DNA of 63,395 bases, counting the filler, from Reticulomyxa filosa (lineage: Eukaryota > Protista > Foraminifera), in NCBI GenBank assembly GCA_000512085.1. It is 13 parts of 13 records of this genome, joined end to end, with 100 filler letters (N's around TTAATTAATTAA, not from the genome) between each part and the next. Parts side by side here need not be neighbours in the genome. Positions count along the whole stretch, not along the records: positions 55,734 to 61,128 come from ASPP01016115.1; 12 more parts are not named here. One strand, 5' to 3'. The position numbers were made by a program, and so were the translations under genes. Numbering within the stretch: the first letter of the stretch is position 1; each line of letters opens with the position of its first letter. Of the stretch, positions 55,634-61,228 are shown one piece after another. Below the pieces are notes generated by a model. The model saw only the letters and a list, made by a program, of their open reading frames with translations. It was not told where the DNA came from and ran no database searches.

Positions 55634-56924
55634 NNNNNNNNNNNNNNNNNNNNNNNNNNNNNNNNNNNNNNNNNNNNTTAATTAATTAANNNNNNNNNNN
55701 NNNNNNNNNNNNNNNNNNNNNNNNNNNNNNNNNAATATTTACACAATAACTTGAAAATATTTAAAAATCTTTTTTATATGCAAATACAAAGAAAATACAA
55801 ACTGACAATGTCAGATAATTGATCTTGATATTTTCATTGCTGACAGGCATGCTATAGATGGCCAATGATCTGAATGTAAGCATTGACAATCTTATACAAA
55901 TTTGCTTTGCGACTATGACTACAGCTTCGATTTGTAATAATAGATAATATGTTCATTTAGCTTATTAGCTTTTTATATTTTTTAACATCATATGCTCACT
56001 TTAATATATAGACAACTATTGTATTACACAAACTTGTGCTGTGAATTAATATTTTTCATATATTTGTCGATTTATATCACAGCTAGTAATCTAGAATCAA
56101 TTATCGCTGATCTATGTTATGTGATAATACAAGTATTATTTGATTTAATCAATATTTATTGTTCGTTATGATGCTGAAAATAATACATTGCCTCTGGATA
56201 TGCGCTCATGATTATACTGCTGCAAAGATTTTATCTTTTTCATAACCCCAAAAAGATATTTGCCAATAAAGTTACTGGTGTTGGATACACTTTTTTGTTA
56301 TCAGTATCGAGCGAATTCGCTTCGCTGCTTAATCACAACATTTTTATTCTATTTGTCACTGTATACTACTTGCCGTTTGAGCAAAATATATTCGCACATT
56401 TTTTTGTTGAAAGTATTATAAAGTCTTGTCGTCACGTGTATAATCGTTGATGTTGTTGTTGGATCCTCATTCTGTGTTAATATATTCTTTGAAGTTACTA
56501 GAAAATCACTAAACTCTGATGTTGATTCTATTTGGAACATTTTTTGTTTGAACATAATTCACAATAATCACCAAAAAAAGACTATGCTAGTTGTTCCCTC
56601 GTTCACTTTTGCTTTGCAAAGAAAACAAGTGAATAAGTGTAAATATCTAATGAATTATTAATTTGTAATCTTTAAAAATTTAATGTGGCCAATGTGTACC
56701 ACTTAATTCTAAAAAGAGAAATAATGTTCGTAGTCTTTAGACAATAATAACACAGAATAAAATTGAAAGAAAAAAAACGAATGACAGCAATTGGAAGGAG
56801 CTTATCCTTGTGTGTGCAGTTTCATGAGCATATGCACATACACTTTGTCATCACCCTCAAAAATCTGTAAAAACAAAAATTTATACTTTTGAATAATATC
56901 GTTTGTTTGATCGTAGAATAGTGC

Positions 56925-57797
56925 CTATGACCCAATGAAACCTTTTCTTTCTAATAGCATAAAGGAATGCTTTTTGACAGCCGCAGCCATTTGGGTATGA
57001 ATGCTATTAATGCCTTTTTTTGCAAATGACAAAAGTTTCTCCATTTGTGACAAGGGGAGAACGGATTGCATTTCCAGTGTGACAATCTCTCCCGAATTTG
57101 GCATCATAGCCACCGTCACAATCCCATTGCACATTTCAAGTCCACTCTCATTCCCTTCCGATATATTGGTAGAAGAATATGAACTGTGTTTCGATAAATT
57201 TTTTTCTTGCTGATTTAAGTCGACAATGCCTTGCAATCCACTGAACATTATATGATCTGTTTTAGCTCCTGTTTTATTTGTTTGTTTCAATGATCTCGTC
57301 GATTTTGCAATAAATCCGGCCGAACATGCGACAACATAATCTTTCATACATATTCCAGCATTTATCAATGCCAGACAGGCTGCATTGATTGCTGCACTAT
57401 TGATATCACCGTCATTCGTTAGTATTTCAATGCAAATATCAATACTCGATTTTGCGTAGAGATTTGTCATTACTGCACATTGAAATGTTTGCGCAATTAA
57501 ATCACCCAATAAACGATCCCTTCGACGAAATTTATTGGCTTGGCGATGGTCAGACTGTGAAAATTCGCATGACTGTACACGACATGTTATTGTCGCCCCG
57601 TCTTCATTCACTCGGGCTGCTTTTGTACTTGCTTGACGGGGGCCAAACACTGTTGCTATCACGTGAGTTGCACCCAGTCGGAATTCAGCACTTCCATCAG
57701 CATGAGGAAAAACACATAATTTGCACTCTACTCGTCTTACTTCATGAGGTCGACGACCATCTTCCCTCAGACCTGATTCTGACAGAGATGTTGCCAT
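56925..57797 (-). CDS. RRP41: Exosome complex component Rrp41 (EXOSC4), intronless
   Basis: GLREDGRRPHEVR, ADGSAEF..GAT.VIATVFGP, SSIDICIEIL..DG, AAINAACLALINAGICMKD, DLNQQE. Confidence 0.93.
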   Translation of the reverse strand: MATSLSESGLREDGRRPHEVRRVECKLCVFPHADGSAEFRLGATHVIATVFGPRQASTKAARVNEDGATITCRVQSCEFSQSDHRQANKFRRRDRLLGDLIAQTFQCAVMTNLYAKSSIDICIEILTNDGDINSAAINAACLALINAGICMKDYVVACSAGFIAKSTRSLKQTNKTGAKTDHIMFSGLQGIVDLNQQEKNLSKHSSYSSTNISEGNESGLEMCNGIVTVAMMPNSGEIVTLEMQSVLPLSQMEKLLSFAKKGINSIHTQMAAAVKKHSFMLLERKGFIGS

Positions 57798-58385
57798 TAT
57801 ATTGATTTTTTTTTACCTGGTTTTTTCCTATTTTTAAGTAAAATTAGTGTCTGTTCACAACTTTTAGTTATCCGCCTAACAGCATTTGGTATACAGTTGT
57901 TGATGTTTTTGAAAACTATCTTTAACGTTTGCAAAACAAAAAATGGATACTTTCCATTTGGTTTTGACAATAATATAAAGGAAAATCCTTTTGTAGATTA
58001 AGAAATATTTGTCACAGTAAAAGCATACATCTCTACACCTCGAAAAAACTGCAGCTGTGATGTTAGAAAATAAATTAGTTATTTGTGAAGCTTTGTTTTT
58101 AAAATTTCTATGTCAACGAAAACAATAACATATTTTTGATAATGTATGGTTATGCTTTTGATCGTGAGTAAAGCTGTATGTAACAAAAAAAAAAGAGACC
58201 ACTAAATAACATTTGCAATTCCGTTGAAAATGCACGAATAAATTTAAACGCATATGTTCGTGTGACAACAGTATGCGTTATTTCTTTTCTTAATCGGTGA
58301 AAAAACTGGTCAAAGTGGTTACAATTCTGTTTTTTTGAAGTCGCTCTTTTGGAAGAGAGCAGGTCGAAACAATTGTATTGATAAA

Positions 58386-59893
58386 ATGGGCAATTGCTAC
58401 GATAAGCCAGTAACAGCAAACGCGAGTCTTTCTTCAATCACTCCTACTGACTTTCGACTGCCTAAAAGAAGTTTTGGAAGCGAAAGTACGGGTGTTGTTT
58501 ACGGTGATCGAAGAGCGACTCAGCCAACAGAAAATGATCACTATTCCAACGGCCTAACAACAGGCAGTGTTAATGAGAGTACTCATATGGCTCGTTCTGA
58601 ATTCAACCAAGAGGCAGCCACAGTAATTTACCAATTTTGGGTGGAGCACATTCAAAATCTGGCCAGCGAGGAAAAAACAGTTAAATAATTTTATCAAGCA
58701 CACTTGCACATAACTAAAAAAAAACTAAAAAACTACAGACAGTTGCTGTGACCTTATATGGACATTTGTTTTGTCGTTTGGGTGAATGTCGAGAGATTTT
58801 TTTGAACCGCGGCCCTGTTGAGCCAGTTGGATTTGAACTTTTAAATAGTGTACGTTGCAAACGTTTTTTTTTTTGTCTTTCCAAACAGAATACATTTTTT
58901 AGGTGTTTTTTTTAAAAAAGATTGGACATTTAATATTCTTGGTGAAAAAGAAGAGAAATGCAAAAGTGCAAATGGGAATGGCGAAGCTGAGAGCGTTTTA
59001 TGCGGAGTATGGAATTAAGTACAAGTACTACAGTTCTTTTTTACAGGCATTGCACTGTACATTTGAAGGCTGTGGTCATAATGTATATTCATTGCGAGTC
59101 AAGTTTTGCTTGGAAAGTATCTTTACAACTGCGGCAACAATGATCACAGGAAAGGATTTCTCGACCTTGTTCCGTGATCGTGTAGCTGATTTTTGGTCCT
59201 TGGAATTTTTGGATTCTTTGGATATTTGTCTAGCTCATCCCACAAGGGTTTTTTTTTTTTTTTTTTTGTGCGCAAATTTTTTTTTTTTATTCGTAACTTG
59301 TGTATCTTTTTTTTTTGTGGGATGTATTTGTACTTTTTCAGGACGCGAATATTTTGATCGGTATTTGCAGCAATCATTTTGTGAAGAGTATATGCACTTT
59401 TTACAAAGATTCATGGTGTTTAAAGGGCTAGCATCCCCACAAGAAAGGTTTGAGAAGCATCAGAAATTTATTTGATCCATTTCAGTTTGGGTGCAGGAGA
59501 GTTCATTGATCTTTCGGATAGACGGCAAATCGAAAAAGTTTTGTACATATTCTCATATTCAATCGTTTTCTGTTTCAACGTATTCTTTTTTTTCTCCTTT
59601 TTTAAACACAAAAGCCCAAACAAAAAACGGGGATAAGATACAGCTTTTTTTTTCCTTTCTTATTTATCCCTTTGAAAACAAACTAGTTAAAGCAAGATCT
59701 GCAACACTTTAAAGAATGTAGTAATGGGAAAAAATGTGCTTGCGACAAGGCCAACTCACAGTGCAATATTGAAAGTACTCTTCTCGATTGTGTTTATGCA
59801 GATGTCAAAAACGACATTGAGAAAAACATTTGGCCGCAATTTGTTAGTGCCATTCTCTCCATCAAAGAGGCCACAAGACCACAAATAATTTAA
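58386..59893 (+). CDS. Predicted N-acylated globin-fold + RGS domain fusion protein, 5 exons
   Basis: Exons 58386-58679, 58739-58849, 58921-59247, ~59341-59537, 59687-59893. MGNC start; globin pattern (IYQFW..LYGHLF..CREIF..LRAFYAEYGI..YSSFLQAL); RGS pattern (LDICLAHP.GREYFDRYLQQSFCEEYMHFL..ASEIYLIHF..IDLS..LLDCVYADV..NIWPQF). Needs two 1-nt corrections (~59247, ~59455). Confidence 0.78.
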
Positions 59894-61228
59894 CTACATA
59901 ATAGTCATGTGTTGATAAGTGCTTTCAAGTATTTGAAAAATGTTGGTGAGGCGAGGAAGAAAAAAAAATTATGAATGTACTGTTTTCTTTGAATTTTTTT
60001 TTCTTCTTTTCTCTTTCACTGTAACAAAGCTCATTTCAACACATTTGTTTTTTATTATTTGCTCGTTGTCTTTTTTTTATTCGTTTTGGGTATATTGTAT
60101 TTGCTTCCATTAAACTGTGGATATCCAAGTACACGGAAATTGTTTTGCATAGATTATATTGACTTGTCATCCTTCCACAGTTTCTGACATGATCGAAAAA
60201 AGAACCAACTTACGAATAAGAGCTTTTTTGTCTAGAACATTTACATCAATGGATGGTGCAACAAAATCTTTGTTTAAATCTCAATGTTGTAAGAAGTAAT
60301 TCAAAATGCACACGATCACAATATAATTGTGTAAAAAAAGATAACACTGCATGAATGCAAGAGAAGCTATACATCCGTTCCAGTCACAACACTTGTGTAA
60401 TCTGTTTTTTTTTACGTTCATAGGATGAGTTCTGCACATAAAAAAAATCTGCAACTCATGCGTTTCTATAGTTTCCGTTTTTACATTTTTTGTTCATATT
60501 CTGTGTTACGTTTGTGGCATTATCTTTTTTTTTGTTTCTTATTTTTCTCATTTACAAACGTTTATATACGTATTACACTTTAGTTGTTTGTTTTTGAAGT
60601 TCTTTCTTATGCAATTACATTTTAACACAACATTTTTCTTAGGCCACTTACTACATACATTACTAGGCAATTATATTGGTAAACTTTTGTCAGTAAAATC
60701 GTGTTCAACCTATCACAAAAAAGTCGTCTAAATCACCCTGCAAGCATTTGCAATTTTATCCATGAAAGCCACAATATTTTTCAAAATAATATCTATAAAT
60801 TGTGATAAATCAAAGAGCGTATTCGATTTTTAATAAACGTTTGAAAACTACGAAAAAGTTTGTTTTGCTAATGATGGATAGTGGCTTGATTTTTTTTGTT
60901 GATCACAGTTTGGTTTTTTTATTTTTGTGCGTAAATGATGTGTATTTTATGAATGATGCAAGTTTGTTTGTTTTTTTGCCGATATTGTCGTATTGTTGTT
61001 ATTGATATTAGTTTGCAAGTTAATTTTTATTTTATTGGTTTTGTGAATTATCAAAGCTTTTAAAGCTGAACTTTGGCGTTTAACTTTTGTTATTTTATTA
61101 TTTATTTTTATCAATTTAATCAACTGTANNNNNNNNNNNNNNNNNNNNNNNNNNNNNNNNNNNNNNNNNNNNTTAATTAATTAANNNNNNNNNNNNNNNN
61201 NNNNNNNNNNNNNNNNNNNNNNNNNNNN

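What the first reader, a model, noticed from the sequence alone, without database searches (positions are those of the whole stretch)
58386..59893. Membrane-anchored globin-RGS fusion: candidate heme/gas/redox-sensing regulator of G-protein signalling
Seen: splicing five exons gives MGNC.., a ~70-aa linker, then a full 3/3 globin helix pattern (A: EAATVIYQFW; B-CD: VAVTLYGHLFCRLGECREIF with B10 Tyr and CD1 Phe; E: EPVGFELLNSIGHLI; F: MAKLRAFYAEYGI; G: YYSSFLQALHCTF; H: YSLRVKFCLESIFTTAATMI). An RGS box follows directly (LDICLAHP.GREYFDRYLQQSFCEEYMHFL..RFEKASEIYLIHF..GEFIDLS..R..I..LLDCVYADVKNDIEKNIWPQF). The ORF track splits it into unrelated pieces. Known: RGS domains are GAPs for G-alpha, and globin-coupled sensors link heme ligands to output domains in prokaryotes. 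Inference: this is a eukaryotic globin-coupled sensor whose output is G-alpha deactivation, plausible for a protist living in oxygen gradients. I am not aware of a characterised globin-RGS architecture. Caveat: two single-base corrections are needed, so this copy could be a young pseudogene.
Basis: partly seen in the sequence, partly recalled or inferred. Interest (0 to 1): 0.9.

Follow-up and report, generated by a model that had tools for sequence, protein, structure and literature searches.

The report
Foraminiferal globin-RGS fusion gene, divergent copy
This Reticulomyxa filosa gene belongs to a real family, found here only in foraminifera and in no paper searched, that fuses a haemoglobin-like domain to a G-protein regulator (RGS) domain, but this copy has lost the haem-binding histidine and its reading frame is broken twice in the assembly.

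Summary
The piece is Reticulomyxa filosa contig ASPP01016115.1.

A family profile built without R. filosa sequences matches solved globins (Hell's Gate globin I, E=5e-18) and RGS domains (RGS18, E=6e-14). Predicted structures confirm both folds: TM 0.87 and 0.80-0.86 for an intact homologue, and Z 14.7 to 3s1i for the target's globin region.

All labelled members come from six foraminiferal genera. They usually start with Met-Gly, which suggests myristoylation. No paper searched describes a globin-RGS architecture.

This copy is atypical in three ways:
- With two sister paralogues it has Tyr instead of the proximal His F8.
- It has Asp where RGS4 has the G-alpha-contacting Asn128.
- Its RGS-coding part carries two frame breaks (59245-59248 and 59457/59458) that three paralogues lack.

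The globin is of the flavohaemoglobin/neuroglobin type, not the sensor (protoglobin) type of bacterial globin-coupled sensors. The exons are otherwise as well conserved as those of the paralogues. The breaks are therefore either very recent or assembly errors, and no reads could be listed to decide.

Verdict: the architecture is genuine and interesting at family level. A gas-sensing role for this copy is unlikely.

The parts
58386..58679 (+). Exon 1: start Met-Gly-Asn-Cys (candidate N-myristoylation/palmitoylation), about 70 aa low-complexity linker, then globin helix A (FW motif)
   Evidence: Translation. The Met-Gly start is shared by most full-length family members. It scores 16.6 bits against the family HMM. 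The equivalent N-terminus of homologue P0006 is disordered (pLDDT below 30).
58680..58738 (+). Intron 1 (59 nt, GT-AG, phase 0)
   Evidence: The junction is gap-free against transcriptome homologues.
58739..58849 (+). Exon 2: globin helices B to start of E. Tyr B10 is at codon 58757-58759, and Phe CD1 lies in the ...EIF motif
   Evidence: The alignment to Hell's Gate globin I places the Tyr at the B10 position.
58850..58920 (+). Intron 2 (71 nt, GTACGT...AG, phase 0)
   Evidence: The database model ETO17725.1 uses a wrong acceptor here, which adds 6 residues.
58921..59247 (+). Exon 3: globin helices E-H, the conserved linker helix and RGS helix 1. Tyr replaces the proximal His F8 at codon 58999-59001
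   Evidence: It scores 107.3 bits against a family HMM built without R. filosa sequences, the same as the paralogues (105.7-114.6). phmmer found 26 true homologues. The F8 column is shown.
59245..59248 (+). Frame lesion 1, at the exon 3 donor. The target reads ACA AGG|GT where the paralogues read ACN G|GT, so exon 3 ends in phase 0 but exon 4 needs phase 1
   Evidence: Loci L002, L003 and L004 all show the phase-1 junction.
59248..59341 (+). Intron 3 (94 nt, GT then a T18 run ... CAG). It stays open in frame only because of lesion 1, and the database model reads through it as 32 junk residues
59342..59537 (+). Exon 4: RGS core helices. Asp replaces the RGS4-Asn128-equivalent Asn at codon 59508-59510
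   Evidence: Pfam RGS E=0.051 on 59344-59457. The part upstream of lesion 2 scores 45.0 bits against the family HMM. Residue mapping is through the RGS18 alignment.
59457..59458 (+). Frame lesion 2: one base of the Ala codon (GAG AAG [G]CA TCA) is missing relative to the paralogues. The upstream frame then hits TGA at 59473-59475
   Evidence: The database model skips about 38 nt here as a pseudo-intron.
59538..59686 (+). Intron 4 (149 nt, GT-AG, phase 0)
59687..59893 (+). Exon 5: C-terminal RGS helices (...NIWPQF... motif), a conserved tail and the TAA stop
   Evidence: It scores 30.5 bits against the family HMM, as do the paralogues (25.7-30.6).

Best explanation
Window 58386-59893 is one of four Reticulomyxa filosa paralogues of a family found here only in foraminifera. 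Its members are N-terminally acylated two-domain proteins. A 3-on-3 globin of the flavohaemoglobin/neuroglobin type is joined by a conserved helical linker to an R4-like RGS domain.

Shown:
- Both folds, the fusion on single transcripts in other foraminifera, and the restriction of labelled members to Foraminifera.
- The subclade position of this copy and its residue changes.
- The two frame breaks.

Inferred for canonical members (His F8, Asn at the RGS4-128 site): the protein sits on a membrane through myristoyl-Gly2 (plus palmitoyl-Cys in some). The ligand or redox state of the haem changes how the RGS domain engages an activated G-alpha. This would couple O2/NO/redox status to heterotrimeric G-protein signalling. 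I put about 35-40% on that mechanism.

This copy belongs to an R. filosa-specific trio in which F8 became Tyr once and was then kept through further duplications, and in which the Asn128-equivalent became Asp or Glu. A Tyr-ligated haem would be locked ferric, as in haemoglobin M and myoglobin H93Y (established knowledge). The trio is therefore most likely a neofunctionalised module, either non-gas-binding or haem-free.

In the assembly this copy's RGS half is interrupted by two frame breaks. I put about 55% on real, very recent lesions, which would make it a young pseudogene or a truncated globin-only product. I put about 45% on assembly errors.
For: - Identity of the contig and the annotated gene.
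- Family: phmmer with exon 3 found 26 true homologues in 1.84 billion proteins.
- Domains: Pfam Globin and RGS are both above gathering in P0005, P0006 and P0011. Of 28 members, 17 match Globin and 21 match RGS.
- Profile against solved structures: 3s1i E=4.9e-18, 3wfw E=7e-15, RGS18 E=5.9e-14.
- AF2 model of P0006: residues 84-382 are confident. It matches RGS8/RGS16 at TM 0.80-0.86 and 3s1i at TM 0.87.
- Target globin region model: pLDDT 80.8. The top 50 Foldseek hits are all globins. VIA gives Z 14.7 with 131/131 residues of 3s1i aligned at rmsd 2.3.
- Taxa: Reticulomyxa, Nonionella, Bolivina, Ammonia, Globobulimina and Elphidium.
- Tree: the R. filosa clade has support 100/98 and the Tyr trio 99/98, sister to the His-bearing P0004.
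- F8 and Asn128-site columns.
- Lesions against intact paralogues.
- Constraint: dN is 0.2-0.4 with saturated dS between paralogues, indicating long-term constraint. Per-exon HMM scores equal those of the paralogues.
Against: - Direct Pfam scans of the target exons or of ETO17725.1 give no Globin hit, and RGS only below gathering. Assignment of the target therefore rests on the family profile and on an MSA-guided model that contains a 6-residue annotation artefact.
- Of the three RGS4 contacts named in PMC8252600 (Asn128, Asn88, Asp163), the whole family keeps only the first. It has Leu or Tyr at the Asn88 site and Asn at the Asp163 site, so GAP activity is uncertain even for canonical members.
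- There is no biochemical, expression or read evidence for any member. No sequencing run could be listed.
- Both lesions amount to one G too few in a G run after AAG, a pattern also expected from homopolymer miscalls.
Confidence: 0.75

Rival explanations
1. Young pseudogene or truncated gene. Both frame breaks are real. The spliced mRNA would run out of frame after exon 3 and stop about 29 codons later, giving at most a myristoylated Tyr-F8 globin-like protein without an RGS domain, or no stable product.
For: Three paralogues and the neighbouring RNase PH gene, about 4.3 kb of coding sequence from the same assembly, have no frame break, while this gene has two within about 215 nt. The breaks lie in short G runs, where sequencing miscalls are uncommon. 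The target also uniquely has Arg for the otherwise conserved Gly in the L-G-x-x-H motif. The intron 3 donor (GT followed by T18) is unusual.
Against: Exons 4 and 5 downstream of the breaks are still open in the correct frames and score like the paralogues against the family HMM. In a 33% GC genome an unconstrained 68-codon frame would rarely stay open. Any inactivation must therefore be very recent.
Confidence: 0.5
2. Intact, expressed gene. The two breaks are assembly or homopolymer errors, and the gene encodes a full-length Tyr-F8 globin-RGS protein like its sisters RFI_04280 and the split model on ASPP01025321.
For: Both breaks are explained by one missing G in a G run preceded by AAG. There is no other decay. 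The R. filosa assembly is described as highly fragmented, with truncated gene models (PMC5784254). All four paralogue gene models in the database are mis-spliced.
Against: Repairing break 1 by one base implies an extra Arg codon that no paralogue has. No frame errors are seen in the paralogues. No reads were available.
Confidence: 0.42
3. One reading: this very gene is a working haem-based O2/NO/CO sensor whose output is GAP activity on G-alpha.
For: The fold and the architecture are right. Tyr B10 and Phe CD1 are kept. The N-terminal acylation motif is present.
Against: The proximal His is replaced by Tyr and the conserved Gly before it by Arg. The Asn128-equivalent is Asp, and the Asn88-equivalent is Tyr. 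The frame is broken twice. Tyr-ligated globins (Hb M, Mb H93Y) hold ferric haem and do not bind O2 reversibly (established knowledge).
Confidence: 0.06
4. Not a globin at all: a helical domain that resembles one by chance in front of an RGS domain.
For: There is no direct Pfam Globin hit on the target. Helical models can reach Z of about 13-14 by chance, according to the tool's own note.
Against: The family profile hits solved globins at E=5e-18, with the B10, CD1, E and F8 motifs in register. Seventeen members pass Pfam Globin at E of 0.001 or better. All of the top 50 structural matches are globins covering the whole chain.
Confidence: 0.02

Closest known systems
Prokaryotic globin-coupled sensors (HemAT, DosC/YddV, AfGcHK)
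   Same: An N-terminal globin is followed by a C-terminal signalling output domain. The logic is the same: the haem state controls the output.
   Different: Those use the sensor/protoglobin (S) globin lineage and MCP, GGDEF or kinase outputs in bacteria and archaea. Here the globin is of F type (Pfam Globin scores above Protoglobin, and the best PDB hits are Hell's Gate globins). The output is a eukaryotic RGS domain, and the protein is lipid-anchored rather than soluble or transmembrane.
Hell's Gate globins of Methylacidiphilum infernorum (HGbI 3s1i; HGbRL 3wfw, a globin fused to a Roadblock/LC7 domain)
   Same: They are the best sequence and structure matches to the globin domain (E=5e-18, TM 0.87, Z 14.7). 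HGbRL is also a chimeric F-type globin. Its partner domain family is linked to GTPase regulation (from memory, not tested here).
   Different: They are bacterial, have His at F8, and have no RGS domain and no acylation signal.
R4-type RGS proteins (RGS18, RGS10, RGS2, RGS8, RGS16, RGS4)
   Same: The RGS fold is shared (TM 0.80-0.86), as is the profile match (E about 1e-13). Most family members keep the Asn128-equivalent. Membrane targeting by N-terminal lipidation is also known for RGS4 and RGS16 (from memory).
   Different: The Asn88-equivalent is Leu or Tyr and the Asp163-equivalent is Asn throughout the family. In the target the Asn128-equivalent is Asp (contact list from PMC8252600). No animal RGS carries a globin.
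[quoted passage not shown]
   Same: It is a globin whose oxidised (ferric) state regulates a heterotrimeric G-alpha subunit (PMC4842972). Neuroglobin is also among the structural matches.
   Different: It is a stand-alone globin that acts as a GDI through its own surface, not through a fused RGS domain. It is a metazoan protein.
Globin X and other N-acylated membrane globins
   Same: They have an N-terminal Met-Gly (plus Cys) acylation motif on a 3-on-3 globin, which places it at a membrane (from memory; globin X is listed in PMC7475203).
   Different: They are single-domain and metazoan, and have no signalling output domain.
Haemoglobin M (F8 His to Tyr) and myoglobin H93Y
   Same: They carry the same substitution at the proximal position as the target and its two sister paralogues.
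   Different: Those are pathological or engineered single substitutions. Here the Tyr arose once and was kept through later gene duplications.

Membership tests
Globin (Pfam PF00042, 3-on-3 fold) | Profile match above the curated threshold | tested here: inconclusive
   Target exons and ETO17725.1 give no Globin hit. Homologues P0005, P0006 and P0011 score 25.5-36.0 bits against a cut-off of 22, and 17 of 28 members match at E of 0.001 or better. The target links to them at 107 bits on exon 3, and the family profile hits PDB globins at E=5e-18.
Globin (Pfam PF00042, 3-on-3 fold) | Three-on-three alpha-helical globin fold | tested here: met
   For the predicted model of the target region (pLDDT 80.8), all top 50 Foldseek matches are globins, and VIA gives Z 14.7 with 131/131 residues of 3s1i at rmsd 2.3. 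The model is MSA-guided and includes a 6-residue annotation artefact.
Globin (Pfam PF00042, 3-on-3 fold) | Proximal histidine F8 as haem iron ligand | tested here: not met
   The target has Tyr (codon 58999-59001), as do P0002 and P0003. The other 24 aligned members have His in the L-G-x-x-H motif, which aligns with L-G-R-R-H of 3s1i.
Globin (Pfam PF00042, 3-on-3 fold) | Haem binding | not testable with these tools
   This needs expression and spectroscopy.
RGS domain (Pfam PF00615) | Profile match above the curated threshold | tested here: inconclusive
   Target exon 4a scores 14.4 bits and ETO17725.1 scores 18.2 bits, against a cut-off of 23.9. The paralogue P0002 scores 29.7 bits, homologues score up to 48.8 bits, and the family profile matches RGS18 at E=5.9e-14. 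The target signal is split by the frame break.
RGS domain (Pfam PF00615) | All-helical RGS fold | tested here: met
   This was tested on the intact homologue P0006 only: RGS8/RGS16 at TM 0.80-0.86, rmsd 1.7-2.4. The target's RGS half was not modelled because it has no unbroken reference.
RGS domain (Pfam PF00615) | G-alpha switch contacts equivalent to RGS4 Asn128, Asn88 and Asp163 (PMC8252600) | tested here: not met
   By the HMMER alignment to RGS18 and the target alignment, the target has Asp, Tyr and Asn at these three sites. Most family members have Asn, Leu or Tyr, and Asn.
RGS domain (Pfam PF00615) | Uninterrupted coding sequence | tested here: not met
   There are two frame breaks, at 59245-59248 and 59457/59458. 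They are absent from loci L002, L003 and L004.
Globin-coupled sensor in the strict sense (S-family globin plus transmitter) | Sensor/protoglobin-type globin domain | tested here: not met
   Pfam Protoglobin hits are weaker than Globin and below gathering. The best solved relatives are F-type globins, phytoglobins and neuroglobin.
N-myristoylated proteins | Gly at position 2 after the initiator Met, conserved | tested here: met
   The Met-Gly start is present in the target and in most full-length members. Actual acylation cannot be tested here, and residue 6 is not the preferred Ser or Thr.

The most novel reading that the evidence does not exclude
Foraminifera have a lineage-specific family of membrane-anchored, haem-globin-regulated RGS proteins that wire O2/NO/redox status directly into heterotrimeric G-protein signalling. 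This would be relevant to their life in hypoxic, denitrifying sediments. The R. filosa Tyr-F8 and Asp/Glu trio, including this locus, would be a neofunctionalised branch with a ferric, Tyr-ligated or haem-free sensor and altered G-alpha engagement.
Probability: 0.3. Interest if true: 0.85.

Novelty: new variant of a known kind. Interest (0 to 1): 0.62.

Why it matters
Chimeric sensor globins are well known in prokaryotes, where they feed chemotaxis, c-di-GMP and kinase pathways. No paper in the searched library describes a globin wired to the eukaryotic heterotrimeric G-protein system through a fused RGS domain.

Foraminifera thrive across steep oxygen and nitrate gradients, and several of the genera that carry the family (Nonionella, Bolivina, Globobulimina) are low-oxygen specialists. 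A haem-controlled RGS would give a directly testable molecular route from gas or redox state to motility and behaviour.

The R. filosa trio with Tyr at F8 is a natural experiment on what a globin sensor becomes when the proximal ligand changes. For this locus the practical message is narrower. The database protein ETO17725.1 is an artefact that reads through an intron and skips a frame break, and the gene may be dead.

Tried and rejected
- Exon-by-exon Pfam found no globin and only a weak RGS hit. The pieces are too short to decide.
- phmmer of exon 3 against PDB sequences gave only chance-level hits (poxvirus A16 and others, E of 0.03 or worse). I rejected them.
- P0007 and P0008 from the representative search are repeat or low-complexity proteins (Y_Y_Y and similar). 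I rejected them as composition artefacts.
- P0042 (Galdieria, globin plus PF13902) is unrelated apart from the globin.
- The look-up of sequencing runs listed no run, so read laying was not used and the two frame breaks could not be checked against reads.
- Brute-force enumeration of the annotated splice model timed out. It was replaced by direct mapping of ETO17725.1 onto the DNA.
- The ESM Atlas feature search and shape search returned only RGS-only clusters and no globin-RGS cluster. This is uninformative, because only clusters of 50 or more members are covered.
- dN/dS between paralogues could not be computed because dS is saturated.
- The Reticulomyxa genome paper (doi 10.1016/j.cub.2013.11.027) is not held, so the sequencing chemistry of the assembly could not be verified.
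I used exon references, the database model P0001 and parts of it, and intact homologues instead. The target's RGS half therefore has no structure model of its own.
- Alternative splice sites that would rescue the frame at intron 3 were looked for by eye and none is canonical. Skipping exon 4 would be in frame but would delete the RGS core.
- tRNA and Rfam scans of the piece were empty.
Full report
**Source and gene model**

The piece (window 55734-61128) is the whole 5,395-bp contig ASPP01016115.1 of the Reticulomyxa filosa assembly GCA_000512085.1. It carries two genes:
- An intronless RNase PH-domain gene on the minus strand (56928-57797; Pfam RNase_PH E=2.6e-28).
- The gene in question on the plus strand. 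It is annotated in the database as ETO17725.1 / X6MXB5, 'hypothetical protein RFI_19592' / 'RGS domain-containing protein', 446 aa.

**Checking the observation**

Reading the DNA and translating by reference gives five exons:
- Exon 1: 58386-58679
- Exon 2: 58739-58849
- Exon 3: 58921-59247
- Exon 4: 59342-59537
- Exon 5: 59687-59890, with the stop at 59891-59893

They are separated by GT-AG introns of 59, 71, 94 and 149 nt. The introns are clearly more AT-rich than the exons (GC 0.22-0.29 against 0.37-0.44). In alignment A1 the separate exon translations abut without gaps against intron-free transcriptome proteins of other foraminifera. The junctions are therefore supported by homology, not only by splice consensus.

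- **Lesion 1 (59245-59248).** Exon 3 ends ACA AGG|GT in phase 0, while exon 4 starts GA CGC and needs one carried-over base. The three paralogous loci all read ACN G|GT ... AG|GN there, a phase-1 intron inside a Gly codon.
- **Lesion 2 (59457/59458).** One base of an Ala codon is missing relative to the paralogues (GAG AAG [G]CA TCA). The upstream frame then stops at 59473-59475.

Mapping ETO17725.1 back onto the DNA shows how the database model keeps an open frame:
- It adds an unsupported upstream exon.
- It uses a wrong acceptor for intron 2, which adds 6 residues.
- It reads straight through intron 3, giving 32 Phe-rich junk residues.
- It skips about 38 nt around lesion 2.
It is an annotation artefact.

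**Is it a globin-RGS protein?**

Exon-wise Pfam gave only a weak RGS hit (E=0.051) and no globin hit. phmmer of exon 3 against PDB sequences gave only noise. An exhaustive phmmer of exon 3 against 1.84 billion representative proteins then found 28 hits. Two of them are repeat artefacts. The rest form a coherent family.
- Several members pass both Pfam thresholds: P0005, P0006 and P0011 score 25.5-36.0 bits on Globin (cut-off 22) and 36.7-48.8 bits on RGS (cut-off 23.9).
- Of 28 aligned members, 17 hit Globin and 21 hit RGS at E of 0.001 or better.
- A profile built only from non-R. filosa members (A2) matches solved globins: Hell's Gate globin I 3s1i E=4.9e-18, 3ubc E=2e-17, and the globin of the Roadblock/LC7 fusion HGbRL 3wfw E=7e-15.
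- The same profile, in its second half, matches RGS18, RGS10, RGS2, RGS8 and RGS4 at E of 1e-14 to 1e-11.
- An AlphaFold2 model of the intact Nonionella homologue P0006 is confident over residues 84-382. It matches RGS8/RGS16 at TM 0.80-0.86 and 3s1i at TM 0.87.

For the target itself I folded the globin part of the database model (P0001:110-294; pLDDT 80.8). All 50 best Foldseek matches are globins. VIA-align gives Z 14.7 with all 131 residues of 3s1i aligned at rmsd 2.3.

The target's exons score against the A2 profile as well as those of its paralogues:
- Exon 3: 107.3 bits against 105.7-114.6.
- Exon 5: 30.5 bits against 25.7-30.6.

**Distribution**

Every member with a source label comes from Foraminifera:
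- Reticulomyxa filosa (4 loci)
- Nonionella stella
- Bolivina argentea
- Ammonia sp.
- Globobulimina turgida
- Elphidium margaritaceum

The rest are unlabelled environmental contigs. A profile search of the 5.8-billion-protein collection added only further close relatives. The ESM Atlas showed only RGS-only clusters. Species carry several paralogues, and the tree shows at least five subfamilies. Full-length members almost always begin Met-Gly, often Met-Gly-Asn-Cys, followed by about 80 disordered residues. This points to N-myristoylation, with palmitoylation in some, and hence membrane attachment. That is an inference.

**What kind of globin and what kind of RGS**

The globin is of the flavohaemoglobin-like (F/M) type. 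Pfam Globin beats Protoglobin, and the nearest solved relatives are Hell's Gate globins, phytoglobins and neuroglobin. It is analogous to prokaryotic globin-coupled sensors, not a member of that lineage.

The HMMER alignment to 3s1i puts the family's conserved Tyr at B10, Phe at CD1 and the L-G-x-x-H motif on the proximal His.

On the RGS side, PMC8252600 names Asn128, Asn88 and Asp163 of RGS4 as the three critical G-alpha contacts. By the alignment to RGS18, the family generally has Asn, Leu or Tyr, and Asn at these sites. Only the first is strictly kept, so classical GAP activity is plausible but not assured even for canonical members.

**What is special about this copy**

- **Proximal ligand.** In the F8 column, 24 of 27 aligned sequences have His. 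The target, RFI_04280 (P0002) and the ASPP01025321 gene (P0003) have Tyr.
- **Position in the tree.** The four R. filosa genes form one clade (100/98). The three Tyr genes form a subclade (99/98), sister to the His-bearing RFI_01537.
- **RGS contact.** The same three genes have Asp or Glu at the Asn128-equivalent site, while RFI_01537 keeps Asn. Both 'functional' residues therefore changed together, once, and were then kept through two more duplications. These duplications are old enough for dS to be saturated while dN stays at 0.2-0.4. That looks like neofunctionalisation under constraint, not decay.
- **Expected chemistry.** From established knowledge of haemoglobin M and myoglobin H93Y, a Tyr at F8 can still ligate haem but locks it ferric and abolishes reversible O2 binding. 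The alternative is a haem-free globin fold.
- **Further changes.** The target additionally has Arg for the conserved Gly of L-G-x-x-H, and Val at the E7 position.

**Are the frame breaks real?**

For real lesions:
- The paralogues and the neighbouring gene, about 4.3 kb of coding sequence from the same assembly, have none, while this gene has two within about 215 nt.
- Both lie in short G runs, where miscalls are rare.
- Mending lesion 1 by one base implies an Arg codon that no paralogue has.

For assembly error:
- Both breaks equal one G too few after AAG.
- All downstream exons remain open and score like the paralogues.
- The assembly is known to be highly fragmented, with truncated models (PMC5784254).

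No sequencing run could be listed, so this stays open. I put about 55% on real and very recent lesions, and about 45% on errors.

**Mechanism**

- **Shown:** the folds, the fusion, the conserved helical linker between helix H and the RGS domain (consensus), the acylation-type N-terminus, and the restriction to foraminifera.
- **Inferred:** in canonical members the haem's ligand or redox state is relayed through the conserved linker to change RGS engagement of activated G-alpha at the membrane.

Two analogues make this plausible:
- Ferric neuroglobin acts as a GDI on G-alpha i/o (PMC4842972).
- The closest bacterial globins include HGbRL, fused to a Roadblock/LC7 domain. That family is linked to GTPase regulation (from memory).

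Rhizaria can have large G-alpha repertoires: Bigelowiella natans has more than 30, according to PMC5784254. I did not verify G-alpha genes in foraminifera.

**Novelty**

Full-text searches found no description of a globin-RGS protein. I searched globin + RGS + foraminifera, globin + 'RGS domain' + chimeric, Reticulomyxa + globin, and RGS + domain architectures + globin. A 2020 review of globin diversity mentions neither RGS nor Rhizaria. Subscription literature is not covered. Automatic annotation already tags some members with both Pfam families.

I rate it a new variant of a known kind (chimeric/sensor globins). It is interesting at family level. This particular locus is a divergent and possibly dead copy.

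**Limits**

All target evidence is by exon reference or through the imperfect database model.
- The target's RGS half has no model of its own.
- No expression, haem or GAP data exist for any member.

Noticed in passing
window 56928-57797 (-): An intronless 290-aa ORF with RNase_PH (E=2.6e-28) and a weak RNase_PH_C domain. It is probably an exosome RNase PH-like subunit, transcribed divergently from the globin-RGS gene with about 590 bp between the two start codons.
   Followed up: partly
L003 1186-2794 (ASPP01025321.1); L004 1501-2960 (ASPP01001535.1); L002 1501-3118 (ASPP01003886.1): All three paralogue gene models in the database are mis-spliced. The L003 gene is split into a 275-aa 'globin' model and a separate 183-aa 'RGS' model. 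P0002 and P0004 contain translated intron segments. The underlying exons are intact and match the family profile.
   Followed up: partly
window about 59056-59058 (His in the L-Q-A-L-H motif of exon 3); column conserved in alignment A3: A nearly invariant His in globin helix G is kept in all members, including the Tyr-F8 trio. It sits at about position G12 by the alignment to 3s1i, where other globins have a hydrophobic pocket residue. Its role is unexplained; it could be an alternative haem ligand or a structural residue.
   Followed up: no
F8 codon 58999-59001 and Asn128-site codon 59508-59510; same columns in L002, L003, L004: The loss of the proximal His (to Tyr) and of the RGS Asn (to Asp or Glu) co-occur in the same three R. 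filosa paralogues. The fourth paralogue keeps both. This suggests the two domains changed function together.
   Followed up: partly
window 59249-59268 and elsewhere (for example 58856-58866, 59278-59290, 59312-59321): Long T or A homopolymer runs (up to T18) fill the introns and flanks of this contig. Such runs are error-prone for some sequencing chemistries and may matter for judging the assembly.
   Followed up: no
PDB 3wfw (hit of profile A2): Among the closest solved globins is HGbRL of Methylacidiphilum infernorum, a globin naturally fused to a Roadblock/LC7 domain. This is a possible bacterial parallel of a globin coupled to a GTPase-regulatory module.
   Followed up: no
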